Shown here in pieces: positions 6,360 through 8,615 of a stretch of DNA of 64,000 bases (position 1 is its first letter; each line of letters begins with the position of its first letter). The DNA is taken from NCBI RefSeq assembly GCF_963853765.1, contig NC_088860.1:23684001-23748000 (forward strand). Direction: 5' to 3'. The position numbers and the translations under genes are program-made. The notes beneath the pieces were generated by a model, which searched no databases, was not told the origin of the DNA, and worked only from the letters and a program-made list of their open reading frames with translations. The stretch is from Magallana gigas (Eukaryota).

Positions 6360-7000
6360 ATGAGAATGATTTTTGGAGTTTCTGAGCCGGCCGTCTTTCT
6401 TCTTGTGCTCTTCGGCTGGGCAGGGCTCGGGGGTAGGTGATCATCTATTTAAGGGTTTCATTTAGAGCTTTAATTAAGAATATACAACAGATACTGATTA
6501 TGTTATGTAATTATGAGTCATGATATTCATTGATAGTTTTATTAAACTTTATTTTCAAATGTATTGTACTTATAAAAATGAAAATATTCATTCCAAAGGC
6601 GGCTTTGAATTAAAACCTTCCATCAGCTTGACCTAAATACCCAACATGTTGTTTATCGATCTCCACCTGCCATTACTTCACTCTTCATTAATTAAAATCT
6701 TCTCCTGCAATCACTGGCGTACAGGAAAACGGTTTTGTTTGGCTTGACTACAAACTGCTGTATTTGTTCTTTTAGGTTTCATTTTTCCTCAATAAAAATA
6801 TTATTTTATACATAATGAAATATATTGATGCATTTTCAGAAGCGGGTCATTATAAAAAAGCAGGTGAATGCCCAGTAGCGTCCCCTTACATGGCTGGCGT
6901 CTGTAGCTACGATTGTTCGTACGATGCCGAATGTGAGGACGACAAAAAGTGTTGCAGCACGGGATGTGGAATGGTCTGTCAGTCCCCTGTGTTTAAAGGT

Positions 7001-7075
<75 letters not shown>

Positions 7076-8615
7076 CACACCGAACAATTAGGCTAGGTTG
7101 TTGATTTCATTCTTTTTTTTTTACAGATGCCCTGTCCAAAGGGGCTGAATGCCCAAAAGTGTCCTATCGAAAGGATACGTATGGGAACACGTGGCCTATG
7201 ACGTCATTTATCTATTGCGACACAGGATGTTGTGGAAGCAGGGACAATCAGGACTGTTGTGACGAAGACAAGGATAACAGGTCAATATCTCGCGAGATTA
7301 AAAAATTCACTGATTTAAAATAAATTTTTCGTAAAAACATAAACATGCAAAAACATGGACAGGCCAATACGCAGTAACTAAATAATCCTTTTCTTCTGTG
7401 ATTTCATCAACGATTTTTATTTTTATTCAAGACTATTAATGATACACATTTTTATTCAAGACTATTAATGAAACACATAAATGACGAATTTTGATCAAAA
7501 TATATAACCCTGGCATATATTAATTGGTTAATGCTAAAACTAATATTGATTGATGTATCCGAGTACAGTGTTGCCTGGTTATTACGGACATCTTTTGTTA
7601 CAAACACAAATTGTCCGGATTAATGAGTCATCTGTATTTTTATAAATGAATCACCAGTTTTAAGATTGTTTACCATTTCAAAAGCTTTTATTTAATTTTT
7701 AATTGATTATCAGAAAAATAAGAAAAGGTGAAGAGCTTGTATTACTGATGATCCACTGTAAATACAGAATCGTTAACCTTTGAACTCACAAGCATTCAGC
7801 AAATCAAACGCCTTCTTCTCTCTGTGTAGGACTGGCTTGTACGTCGGTGTCGTGGCTGCTTCCTTGGTTCTGATTGTTGCGACAATCTCAGTCACGTGTT
7901 GCATCGTCCATCGATACAACAGAAAGAATGTCATGGTGGGAATCAATGCAGGAACACACTATCAAATGCAGCGTAAGTGTTTAACTAACGACAAAGGTCG
8001 TCATTTAGTTAACTTTATAAATTATATTTAGTGAAGAAAAAAGCTATATACATTAGCGTTTAGATTGACGTCATATGTCAGCAAAAGTTCAGATAGGTAC
8101 AGTTTATTTTACGTAAACATATATGTGTTGTTTACTTTAATGTTTTTAAAGGATTTTTTTATTGTTAAATGAAATAGATGTATACGATTTAGAGGTTATA
8201 TATTTATAGGGAGCTCTTCTTCTTAAGGAGATCGATACAGTGTAAAAATGGCAACGACCATCGAGTTCTCTTTAAGAAAGACGGACGTAGTTATATACTG
8301 CTAACGATAAAATTAACCTATTAAGTAACATTTGACCTTTGATTTCACTACGCTTAAATGCGTTTTAAAAGAGTGTGTTTTATGAGATTTTTTTTAAGAG
8401 TGTGATTAAGTTTTATTTGTGGTAAGTAGTGCGATCATAATTGTTCTATGTTTTCACGTCTTGTAGCACAAATTGCGCAGTATTCGTACCCAACTGCCCC
8501 GCCACTGTATGAGCAAGCTGTGGCCACAGGAGGTCAGAGTCGCAACTCCAATATAACCCATTCCAGATCCAACTCCAATATAACCCATTCCAGATCCAAC
8601 GGGAAGTTATTTTGA
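6360..8615 (+). CDS. WAP-domain + Shisa-like/CYYR1-type single-pass membrane protein, copy 2 (225 aa)
   Basis: Exons 6360-6432 (signal peptide), 6840-6998 (WAP: KAGECP...CSYDCSYDAECEDDKKCCSTGCGMVCQSP, 8 Cys), 7127-7280 (6-Cys domain), 7830-7972 (TM plus CC) and 8467-8615 (tail with APPLY). Total 678 nt, all in frame. Confidence 0.88.
7003..7073. repeat. (GA)n microsatellite immediately after the WAP exon donor
   Basis: Perfect AG run starting 4 nt into the intron. Confidence 0.98.

What the first reader, a model, noticed from the sequence alone, without database searches (positions are those of the whole stretch)
6360..8615. WAP protease-inhibitor domain fused to a Shisa-like PPxY membrane adaptor
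Seen: only paralogue 2 has an extra 159-nt exon encoding a complete 8-Cys WAP domain, inserted between the signal peptide and the 6-Cys domain, with phase-1 introns on both sides (typical of exon shuffling). Established: WAP domains are usually on secreted antiprotease or antimicrobial proteins, and PPxY tails recruit NEDD4-type ligases. I do not know of a described WAP + Shisa-like + TM + PPxY architecture. Inference: a membrane-tethered protease or microbe trap that is then ubiquitinated and internalised, i.e. a candidate new innate-immune clearance receptor.
Basis: partly seen in the sequence, partly recalled or inferred. Interest (0 to 1): 0.75.

Follow-up and report, generated by a model that had tools for sequence, protein, structure and literature searches.

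The report
Oyster membrane adaptor carrying a WAP domain
This is a real, expressed Pacific-oyster gene in which exon shuffling placed a WAP (protease-inhibitor-type) domain on the outside of a small Shisa/CYYR1-like membrane adaptor; oysters have kept it, but its function is untested and the proposed immune role is only a guess.

Summary
Window 6360-8615 (+) is a five-exon gene, Magallana gigas LOC105325066. Its 225-aa product is identical to RefSeq XP_011422750.3, which is named only "uncharacterized protein".

- **Architecture:** signal peptide, then a 159-nt phase 1-1 exon encoding a complete WAP domain (Pfam E 8e-12), then a C*C*CC*CC domain, one transmembrane helix and a cytosolic PPLY motif.
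- **Transcripts:** mRNA contigs join 6432|6840 and 6998|7127 exactly. WAP-exon read depth equals that of the next exon, and no exon-skipping reads were seen.
- **Paralogues:** the two tandem paralogues (92-1761 and 11006-12352) have the same phase-1 intron but no WAP exon.
- **Conservation:** orthologues with the same architecture exist in Crassostrea virginica, M. angulata, two Saccostrea species and two unnamed oysters. Exon structure is the same in S. cucullata. WAP-exon dN/dS is 0.15-0.24.
- **Core family:** the core links to CYYR1-like proteins (profile E 2e-8; hhalign 98.8%) within the Shisa-like STMC6 superfamily.

The WAP is acidic and has anosmin/waprin-type cysteine spacing rather than the elafin/SLPI inhibitory loop. 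No immune evidence exists. I found the architecture only in oysters, and no paper in the searched library describes it. I rate it a new variant of a known kind, of moderate interest.

The parts
6232..6359 (+). 5' UTR (minimum extent)
   Evidence: mRNA contig L022 starts at 6232. X6 contig record 12 starts at 6220.
6360..6432 (+). Exon 1 CDS: signal peptide (residues 1-24), ending in phase 1
   Evidence: ATG at 6360 and GT donor at 6433. Hydrophobic peak over residues 1-23. Junction 6432|6840 seen in 4 runs and in L022/L023.
6840..6998 (+). Exon 2: 159-nt phase 1-1 exon encoding a complete 8-Cys WAP domain (residues 25-77)
   Evidence: Pfam PF00095 E 7.9e-12, 1-41/41. Phases. Spliced on both sides in mRNA contigs. 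dN/dS 0.15-0.24.
7003..7073 (.). (AG)35 microsatellite filling most of the 128-nt intron 2
   Evidence: Tandem Repeats Finder. It caused read laying to mask 6993-7082 and shift the exon 2/3 join by 7 nt.
7127..7280 (+). Exon 3: Shisa-like/CYYR1-like 6-Cys domain with pattern C*C*CC*CC (Cys 86, 108, 112, 113, 121, 122)
   Evidence: Profile links to CYYR1-like proteins. Paralogue 1 matches at 39% identity.
7831..7905 (+). Transmembrane helix (residues ~131-155) inside exon 4 (7830-7972), ending in a CC pair and followed by the basic stretch HRYNRKN
   Evidence: Kyte-Doolittle 19-residue peak of 2.6 at residues 136-155. AF2 helix 124-160. Junctions 7280|7830 and 7972|8467.
8467..8615 (+). Exon 5: cytosolic tail and stop codon
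8499..8510 (+). PPLY (residues 188-191), the only PPxY motif; extended form APPLYEQAV
   Evidence: Conserved in 12 of 13 family members; the exception is P0014, with PPMC.
8543..8600 (+). 27-nt tandem duplication in the tail (SNSNITHSR x2), polymorphic between alleles (216 vs 225/226 aa)
   Evidence: Compare P0038 and P0034 (216 aa) with P0033 and P0036. Gapped mRNA alignment in this exon.
8616..8833 (+). 3' UTR (minimum extent)
   Evidence: L022 and L023 align as far as 8833.
92..1761 (+). Paralogue 1, no WAP. Exons 92-260 (6-Cys), 1050-1210 (TM) and 1622-1761 (PPAY tail). Its signal-peptide exon lies 789-736 nt upstream of the window.
   Evidence: Orthologues P0005, P0015, P0016 and P0020 lack WAP.
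11006..12352 (+). Paralogue 3, CYYR1-like, no WAP. Signal-peptide exon 11006-11051 (phase 1), a 156-nt intron, the 6-Cys exon from 11208, and a tail with PPPY, PPEY and PPRY ending at 12352.
   Evidence: The same third gene sits in tandem in S. cucullata.

Best explanation
LOC105325066 encodes a type I single-pass membrane protein. It belongs to the CYYR1-like branch of the Shisa-like (STMC6) adaptor superfamily.

In an oyster ancestor, after tandem duplication, it gained an N-terminal WAP domain. A symmetric phase 1-1 WAP exon was inserted into the phase-1 intron between the signal-peptide exon and the Cys-rich exon.

**Shown:**
- the gene model;
- constitutive inclusion of the WAP exon in mRNA;
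- conservation of the architecture and exon structure across Magallana, Crassostrea and Saccostrea;
- purifying selection on the WAP exon;
- kinship of the core with CYYR1-like proteins.

**Inferred mechanism.** Like CYYR1, WBP1L and Shisa, the protein would act as a trafficking and degradation adaptor. Its cytosolic PPLY would recruit a NEDD4-family HECT ligase through WW domains. The luminal or extracellular part would select the cargo.

The added WAP domain would widen or redirect that recognition towards a partner not yet known. A serine protease is the default guess for a WAP domain. A receptor ectodomain is also possible, because the closest solved WAP by sequence is that of anosmin-1.
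For: - **Gene model and junctions:**. The product is identical to RefSeq XP_011422750.3.
- **WAP domain:** Pfam E 7.9e-12 over the full model length.
- **Orthologues:** WAP-bearing orthologues in C. virginica, S. echinata, S. cucullata and M. angulata, plus two further oyster mRNA sets.
- **Exon structure:** S. cucullata has the same five exons, with a 162-nt phase 1-1 WAP exon and the same par1-par2-par3 order.
- **Selection:** WAP-exon dN/dS is 0.24 and 0.15 against two related species.
- **One origin:** WAP-bearing proteins and paralogue-1 proteins fall on opposite sides of a single branch in 100% of bootstrap trees.
- **STMC6 kinship:** C*C*CC*CC pattern, transmembrane helix and PY motif. 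The profile reaches PF10873-labelled proteins at E 2.3e-8 and a protein named "CYYR1-like" at 2e-5. hhalign gives 98.8%, E 7.5e-17. Language-model neighbours are CYYR1, WBP1, VOPP1, Shisa, DUF2650 and TMEM92.
- **Family paradigm:** STMC6 and CYYR1 proteins recruit NEDD4-family ligases through PPxY (PMC11399591; PMC5578492).
- **Possible partners exist:** the genome has at least three WW+HECT loci.
- **Module mobility:** several other oyster WAP exons have candidate phase 1-1 boundaries with good splice consensus.
Against: - No direct evidence exists for any binding partner, ligase recruitment, subcellular location or tissue.
- The protein itself has no Pfam hit to CYYR1 or Shisa_N above threshold. 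The bridging proteins are themselves below PF10873's gathering score.
- There is only one PY motif, and one species has PPMC instead.
- The AF2 models are of low confidence (pLDDT 54-55).
- No orthologue was found in the Ostrea edulis protein set, so the fusion is dispensable in at least some oysters, or is younger than the family.
Confidence: 0.6

Rival explanations
1. A membrane-tethered serine-protease inhibitor at the cell surface, a WAP counterpart of the transmembrane Kunitz inhibitors HAI-1/SPINT1. The WAP domain would inhibit a pericellular host protease. The STMC6-like stalk, transmembrane helix and tail would serve mainly as an anchor and turnover signal.
For: - A complete WAP domain under purifying selection.
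- It is anchored outside the membrane by a signal peptide and a transmembrane helix.
- WAP domains in SLPI and elafin are protease inhibitors, and these appear among the solved relatives.
Against: - The C2-x3-C3 spacing matches anosmin-1 and nawaprin. The elafin/SLPI reactive loop (C2-x8-C3) is absent.
- To my knowledge no inhibitory activity has been shown for that subtype.
- The conserved 6-Cys domain, the juxtamembrane YN(K/R)KNV motif and the PY motif are shared with the WAP-less paralogues. This argues that the adaptor core has a function of its own.
Confidence: 0.2
2. One reading: an innate-immune clearance receptor. The WAP domain would trap microbes or microbial proteases. PPxY-driven ubiquitination by a NEDD4-type ligase would then internalise and destroy the complex.
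For: - The architecture would allow it: an extracellular WAP domain and a cytosolic PPLY.
- The C1-C2 loop of the WAP domain varies between genera.
- Some invertebrate WAP proteins (crustins, waprins) are antimicrobial (my knowledge).
Against: - The WAP domains are acidic in all orthologues, with net charge -3 to -9 and pI 4.3-4.75. Antimicrobial WAPs are cationic.
- Overall dN/dS is 0.15-0.24, with no sign of diversifying selection at exon level.
- It is a single-copy gene without expansion.
- No expression link to haemocytes or infection was found in the searched literature.
Confidence: 0.1
3. The WAP exon is a tolerated passenger with no specific function. The protein would work exactly like its WAP-less CYYR1-like paralogues.
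For: - Skipping the exon would keep the reading frame.
- An old gene model (K1PPQ8) omits it.
- No orthologue was found among Ostrea edulis proteins.
Against: - All 8 Cys are invariant across six orthologues.
- dN/dS is 0.15-0.24.
- The exon is included in every mRNA contig seen, in at least five species.
- Every RefSeq isoform whose sequence I read keeps it.
- K1PPQ8 also duplicates the gene body, so it looks like an assembly or prediction artefact.
Confidence: 0.07

Closest known systems
CYYR1 (cysteine and tyrosine-rich protein 1; Pfam PF10873), an STMC6 member
   Same: - Signal peptide, small C*C*CC*CC ectodomain, a transmembrane helix ending in a Cys cluster, and cytosolic PPxY.
- The oyster family profile reaches PF10873-labelled proteins at E 2.3e-8, and hhalign gives 98.8%.
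- CYYR1 recruits the NEDD4-family ligase WWP1 to late endosomes (PMC11399591).
   Different: - The window's protein has no PF10873 hit.
- It has one PY motif rather than three.
- It is not Tyr-rich.
- A 53-residue WAP domain sits between the signal peptide and the Cys domain, which no described CYYR1 has.
Shisa family and other STMC6 proteins (WBP1, WBP1L/OPAL1, VOPP1, TMEM92; Pei & Grishin 2012)
   Same: - The defining C*C*CC*CC pattern plus a single transmembrane helix and PY motifs (PMC5578492).
- A sub-threshold Shisa_N hit of 19.2 bits on the duplicated model P0001.
- NCBI auto-names one Saccostrea isoform "shisa-like-2A".
   Different: - Below Pfam thresholds.
- Much shorter tail than Shisa.
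- To my knowledge the described STMC6 proteins have only the Cys-rich ectodomain and no extra extracellular module. I could not read the Pei & Grishin paper here.
PRRG1-4 (transmembrane Gla proteins) and Commissureless
   Same: - The design principle is shared: a small extracellular module, one transmembrane helix, and PY motifs that bind NEDD4-type WW domains.
- The oyster motif APPLYEQAV resembles PRRG4's GLPSYEQAV (PMC5578492).
   Different: Unrelated ectodomains (Gla versus WAP plus 6-Cys). There is no sequence homology beyond the motif and a weak sub-threshold Comm hit.
WAP domains of anosmin-1, nawaprin and omwaprin
   Same: - These are the closest solved WAPs by sequence: anosmin-1 at E 7.7e-6 and nawaprin at 1.2e-5.
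- Same C2-x3-C3 spacing.
- Weak Foldseek hits go to the same proteins.
   Different: Those proteins are secreted (extracellular matrix or venom). This WAP domain is membrane-tethered and acidic.
Elafin and SLPI (canonical WAP protease inhibitors)
   Same: Four-disulfide core with the same C3 to C8 spacing. Detectable sequence similarity (E 3.5e-4 to 0.013).
   Different: The reactive-site loop (C2 followed by P1-P1' and 8 residues to C3) is not conserved here. Those proteins are secreted and cationic.
HAI-1/SPINT1 and HAI-2 (transmembrane Kunitz inhibitors)
   Same: A functional analogy only: a disulfide-rich inhibitor-type module anchored by a single transmembrane helix (my knowledge).
   Different: Kunitz fold rather than WAP. 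No STMC6 core and no PY-motif adaptor tail.

Membership tests
WAP four-disulfide core (PF00095) | Match to the Pfam model above its gathering score, over the whole model | tested here: met
   45.7 bits for the exon alone and 40.7 bits for the full protein, against a cut-off of 20.8. Model positions 1-41 of 41 are matched.
WAP four-disulfide core (PF00095) | Eight Cys with spacing C3-x5-C4-x5-C5C6-x3-C7-x3-C8 | tested here: met
   Cys 35, 46, 50, 56, 62, 63, 67 and 71. All are invariant in 8 orthologous sequences.
WAP four-disulfide core (PF00095) | WAP fold and disulfide topology | tested here: inconclusive
   AF2 pLDDT for the WAP part is 36-76. Foldseek's top hits are WAP proteins, but at E >= 0.33.
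Inhibitory WAP (elafin/SLPI type) | Canonical reactive-site loop after C2 (C2-x8-C3) | tested here: not met
   C1-x10-C2-x3-C3, as in anosmin-1 and nawaprin. The alignment to SLPI needs gaps across the loop.
Inhibitory WAP (elafin/SLPI type) | Measured protease inhibition | not testable with these tools
   This needs a recombinant ectodomain and enzyme assays.
Shisa-like / STMC6 superfamily | Extracellular C*C*CC*CC six-cysteine pattern | tested here: met
   Cys 86, 108, 112, 113, 121 and 122. They are invariant in 13 family members. The pattern is as defined in PMC5578492, citing Pei & Grishin.
Shisa-like / STMC6 superfamily | Single transmembrane helix shortly after the Cys domain; type I topology with a signal peptide | tested here: met
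   Hydropathy peaks at residues 1-23 and 128-158. AF2 helices at 8-25 and 124-160.
Shisa-like / STMC6 superfamily | Cytosolic PY (PPxY/LPxY) motif(s) | tested here: met
   PPLY at residues 188-191. Conserved in 12 of 13 relatives; one species has PPMC.
Shisa-like / STMC6 superfamily | Statistically supported sequence kinship with named members | tested here: met
   Profile A2 hits P0023 (PF10873) at E 2.3e-8 and a protein named "CYYR1-like" (M. yessoensis) at 2.1e-5. hhalign gives 98.8%, E 7.5e-17; this is partly circular, because A5 came from the A2 search. Atlas neighbours are all STMC6 families, but scores are below 0.9.
Shisa-like / STMC6 superfamily | Binding of NEDD4-family WW domains | not testable with these tools
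   This needs a pull-down or another binding assay.
CYYR1 proper (PF10873) | Pfam PF10873 match above its gathering score (31 bits) | tested here: not met
   P0033 has no PF10873 hit. Even the bridging molluscan proteins score only 15-26 bits. I therefore file it as CYYR1-like, not as CYYR1.

The most novel reading that the evidence does not exclude
The WAP domain gives an STMC6 adaptor a new extracellular specificity. The protein would capture a particular extracellular or luminal protein, either a serine protease (host or microbial) or a receptor ectodomain. It would then hand that protein to a NEDD4-family ligase through PPLY for endolysosomal destruction. This would be a capture-and-degrade receptor of a kind not described, made by a single exon-shuffling event in oysters.
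Probability: 0.12. Interest if true: 0.7.

Novelty: new variant of a known kind. Interest (0 to 1): 0.4.

Why it matters
**A clean case of exon shuffling.**
- The recipient intron phase is preserved in two WAP-less tandem paralogues.
- The inserted exon is symmetric (phase 1-1).
- The fusion is kept under purifying selection across oyster genera.

**A possible new kind of STMC6 adaptor.** Described STMC6 adaptors (CYYR1, WBP1L, Shisa) have only a tiny Cys-rich ectodomain, and how they choose cargo is poorly understood. A natural variant with an added, well-understood binding module offers a way to ask what the ectodomain recognises.

**Relevance to oyster biology.** If the WAP domain binds a protease, this would, as far as I know, be a first membrane-tethered WAP linked to the ubiquitin and trafficking machinery. 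That would bear on oyster mucosal or shell-forming epithelia. As it stands, the gene is an uncharacterised, lineage-restricted gene of moderate interest.

Tried and rejected
- **Complex prediction.** I folded an oyster NEDD4-like WW domain (L025:1480-1593) with tail residues 165-205. The score was 0.16, which is no verdict. It counts neither for nor against binding.
- **AF2 models.** The full-length protein (pLDDT 54) and the ectodomain (pLDDT 55) were both too poor for fold claims. A Foldseek search of AFDB Swiss-Prot returned only WAP proteins at non-significant E-values, and nothing for the 6-Cys domain.
- **Pfam on the 6-Cys exon alone.** No hit.
- **Pei & Grishin 2012 (PMC3295595).** Not held in the library, so I cite it only through PMC5578492 and PMC11399591.
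- **Literature searches.** Searches by gene and protein identifiers, and by WAP+PPxY+transmembrane, found nothing. Searches on oyster WAPs gave only general shell and immune papers.
- **The look-up of encoding contigs for P0004.** Not on record.
- **Old model K1PPQ8 as evidence for a WAP-less isoform.** Rejected. It is a 2012 prediction that also duplicates the gene body, and no skip junction is seen in RNA.
- **A recent donor for the WAP exon.** Rejected. The nearest WAP exon in the genome is only 47% identical.
- **Two separate genes.** Rejected on the mRNA contigs.
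Full report
**What is there.** The window is from an oyster genome. It lies at G000:C8:23,684,001-23,748,000 on a contig of 51,133,819 bp.

Joining 6360-6432, 6840-6998, 7127-7280, 7830-7972 and 8467-8615 gives one ORF of 678 nt, or 225 aa. All introns are GT..AG, with phases 1, 1, 2 and 1. The product is letter-for-letter identical to P0033, which is RefSeq XP_011422750.3, "uncharacterized protein [Magallana gigas]". 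That record is carried on a contig of the same length. Older records call the gene LOC105325066. UniProt auto-names related models "WAP domain-containing protein".

**The WAP exon.** Exon 2 is 159 nt long and symmetric (phase 1-1). It matches Pfam WAP over the whole model (1-41/41) at E 7.9e-12, 45.7 bits against a cut-off of 20.8. It has eight Cys with the canonical C3-x5-C4-x5-CC-x3-C-x3-C spacing.

The closest solved WAPs by sequence are anosmin-1 (E 7.7e-6) and nawaprin (E 1.2e-5). SLPI and elafin follow at 3.5e-4 to 0.013. Like anosmin-1 and nawaprin, this domain has C2-x3-C3. The C2-x8-C3 reactive loop of elafin and SLPI is not present. The domain is acidic in all orthologues, with pI 4.3-4.75 and net charge -3 to -9.

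**Is it one transcript?** Yes.
- Two public mRNA contigs (L022 and L023, each about 1 kb) carry an uninterrupted 216-aa ORF. They map to 6232-6432 | 6839-6998 | 7120-7281 | 7828-7972 | 8467-8833.
- Both read ...CCCCTGTGTTTAAAG|ATGCCCTG, which is exactly the 6998|7127 junction.
- In read laying, single contigs from two other studies span exons 1 to 5 (X2 record 7, 682 nt) or exons 1 to 3 (X6 record 12, 544 nt).
- The exon 2/3 join is printed there as 6991 to 7120. This is because 6993-7082, which includes the (AG)35 repeat, was masked, and TTTAAAG differs from TTTACAG by one letter. The per-piece mismatch counts fit that reading.
- Raw polyA reads (X21) give equal depth over the WAP exon (4.47) and exon 3 (4.42). 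The RNA strand is +. No 6432-to-7127 skip joint is listed.
- Depth is low, so a minor WAP-less isoform, which would stay in frame, cannot be excluded.

**Only paralogue 2?** Yes. The window holds a tandem trio, which the scan also noted earlier as s1-385532.
- Paralogue 1 has exons at 92-260, 1050-1210 and 1622-1761. Its signal-peptide exon lies 789-736 nt upstream of the window start.
- Paralogue 3 spans 11006-12352 and has three PY-type motifs (PPPY, PPEY, PPRY).
- All three genes have a phase-1 intron between the signal-peptide exon and the Cys-rich exon.
- Paralogue 3's first intron is only 156 nt.
- tblastn with this gene's WAP exon finds nothing WAP-like in the 20 kb upstream of the window.
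- A genome-wide PF00095 scan finds at least 42 WAP exons, but only this one in the window's span of C8.
- The nearest WAP exon by sequence is on another chromosome, at 47% identity. So there is no recent donor.
- Several other oyster WAP exons show candidate phase 1-1 boundaries with good splice consensus. This is heuristic, but it fits WAP being a mobile class 1-1 module.

**Conservation.** An exhaustive HMMER search with the 6-Cys exon, followed by word-indexed searches, found the same architecture (signal peptide, WAP, 6-Cys, transmembrane helix, PPxY) in:
- Saccostrea echinata LOC133202658;
- S. cucullata LOC134232880;
- Crassostrea virginica LOC111099862;
- M. angulata LOC128181416;
- two further sets of oyster mRNA contigs, P0012 and P0014.

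The S. cucullata locus has the same five exons, a 162-nt phase 1-1 WAP exon, and the same par1-par2-par3 order. The WAP exon has dN/dS of 0.24 and 0.15 against two related species, similar to the rest of the gene. All eight WAP cysteines are invariant. On a tree of the shared core, WAP-bearing proteins and paralogue-1 proteins fall on opposite sides of one branch in 100% of bootstrap trees, so one gain suffices.

No WAP-bearing member was found outside Magallana, Crassostrea and Saccostrea. Ostrea edulis contributes only a paralogue-1 orthologue and a distant relative. The word-indexed searches have limited sensitivity and I could not search other bivalve genomes. The age of the fusion is therefore open.

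**What the core is.** The 6-Cys domain has the C*C*CC*CC pattern that defines Shisa-like (STMC6) proteins (PMC5578492, citing Pei & Grishin 2012). After it come:
- a transmembrane helix ending in a CC pair (CCC in most relatives);
- a conserved YN(K/R)KNV juxtamembrane motif;
- one PPxY.

No Pfam family is hit above threshold. However, the family profile reaches PF10873-labelled (CYYR1) molluscan proteins at E 2.3e-8, and a scallop protein named "CYYR1-like" at 2.1e-5. hhalign between the two alignments gives 98.8%, E 7.5e-17; this is partly circular. The language-model neighbours are CYYR1, WBP1, VOPP1, Shisa, DUF2650 and TMEM92, which are the families grouped as STMC6, but scores are below 0.9 and count only as leads. 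I therefore call it CYYR1-like within STMC6, not CYYR1 itself.

**How it probably works.** This is inferred, not shown. STMC6 proteins are single-pass adaptors whose PPxY motifs recruit NEDD4-family HECT ligases. CYYR1 brings WWP1 to late endosomes, and WBP1L/OPAL1 targets CXCR4 (PMC11399591). Shisa retains Frizzled and FGFR through its Cys-rich domain (PMC5578492).

The oyster genome has at least three WW+HECT loci. The motif APPLYEQAV resembles PRRG4's functional GLPSYEQAV. The most economical reading is an adaptor whose extracellular or luminal recognition surface has been extended by a WAP module.

What the WAP domain binds is unknown. A serine protease is the default guess. However, the loop and charge features above argue against an elafin-like inhibitor and against a cationic antimicrobial. 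From memory, anosmin-1's WAP region contributes to FGFR1 binding, so a receptor target is conceivable.

One species has PPMC instead of PPMY, in two contigs. This cautions against treating the PY motif as indispensable.

**Novelty and verdict.** The gene model is public but uncharacterised. I found no paper that mentions it or the architecture. The architecture is not common.

The immune-clearance function is an untested hypothesis, with some features pointing against its microbe-binding half. I rate this a new variant of a known kind, with interest 0.4.

Noticed in passing
window 8543-8600: A perfect 27-nt tandem duplication in the last coding exon adds SNSNITHSR to the cytosolic tail. Public M. 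gigas and M. angulata proteins come as 216-aa (one copy) and 225/226-aa (two copies) forms, so this is an allelic length polymorphism.
   Followed up: partly
window 7003-7073: An (AG)35 microsatellite fills most of the 128-nt intron between the WAP exon and the 6-Cys exon. It made the read-laying tool mask the junction.
   Followed up: yes
window 8066-8179 (intron 4): High RNA depth on both strands, with loose ends running into unrelated sequence in raw reads and contigs. This looks like a dispersed repeat or transposon fragment transcribed elsewhere, not part of this mRNA.
   Followed up: no
window 9092-9300: RNA contig cover (depth up to 212 in X1) begins about 260 nt beyond the mapped 3' end of the gene (8833). 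Its origin is unexplained; it could be a repeat or another transcript.
   Followed up: no
window 11006-12352: Paralogue 3 of the tandem trio is a more typical CYYR1-like gene, with three PY-type motifs (PPPY, PPEY, PPRY) and a 156-nt phase-1 first intron. An N run at 12487-12630 follows it.
   Followed up: partly
P0001 (UniProt K1PPQ8_MAGGI): The 2012 M. gigas gene model for this locus skips the WAP exon and contains the 6-Cys, TM and tail body twice. It is probably a haplotype-duplication or prediction artefact of the old assembly.
   Followed up: partly
L020, L021 (P0014, unnamed oyster species): The orthologue in this species reads PPMC where all others have PPxY, in two independent run assemblies. 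This may be a lineage-specific loss of the WW-binding tyrosine.
   Followed up: no
G000 C8:24.508-24.643 Mb; C4:24.80-25.16 Mb; C2:11.637-11.649 Mb: Clusters of WAP exons (tandem WAP gene arrays) lie elsewhere in the genome. One cluster is about 0.8 Mb downstream on the same chromosome as this gene.
   Followed up: no
P0030 (S. cucullata isoform X4): A RefSeq isoform begins MQEADHL..., so it lacks the signal peptide but keeps the WAP domain. NCBI auto-names it "protein shisa-like-2A". It may come from an alternative first exon or be a prediction artefact.
   Followed up: no
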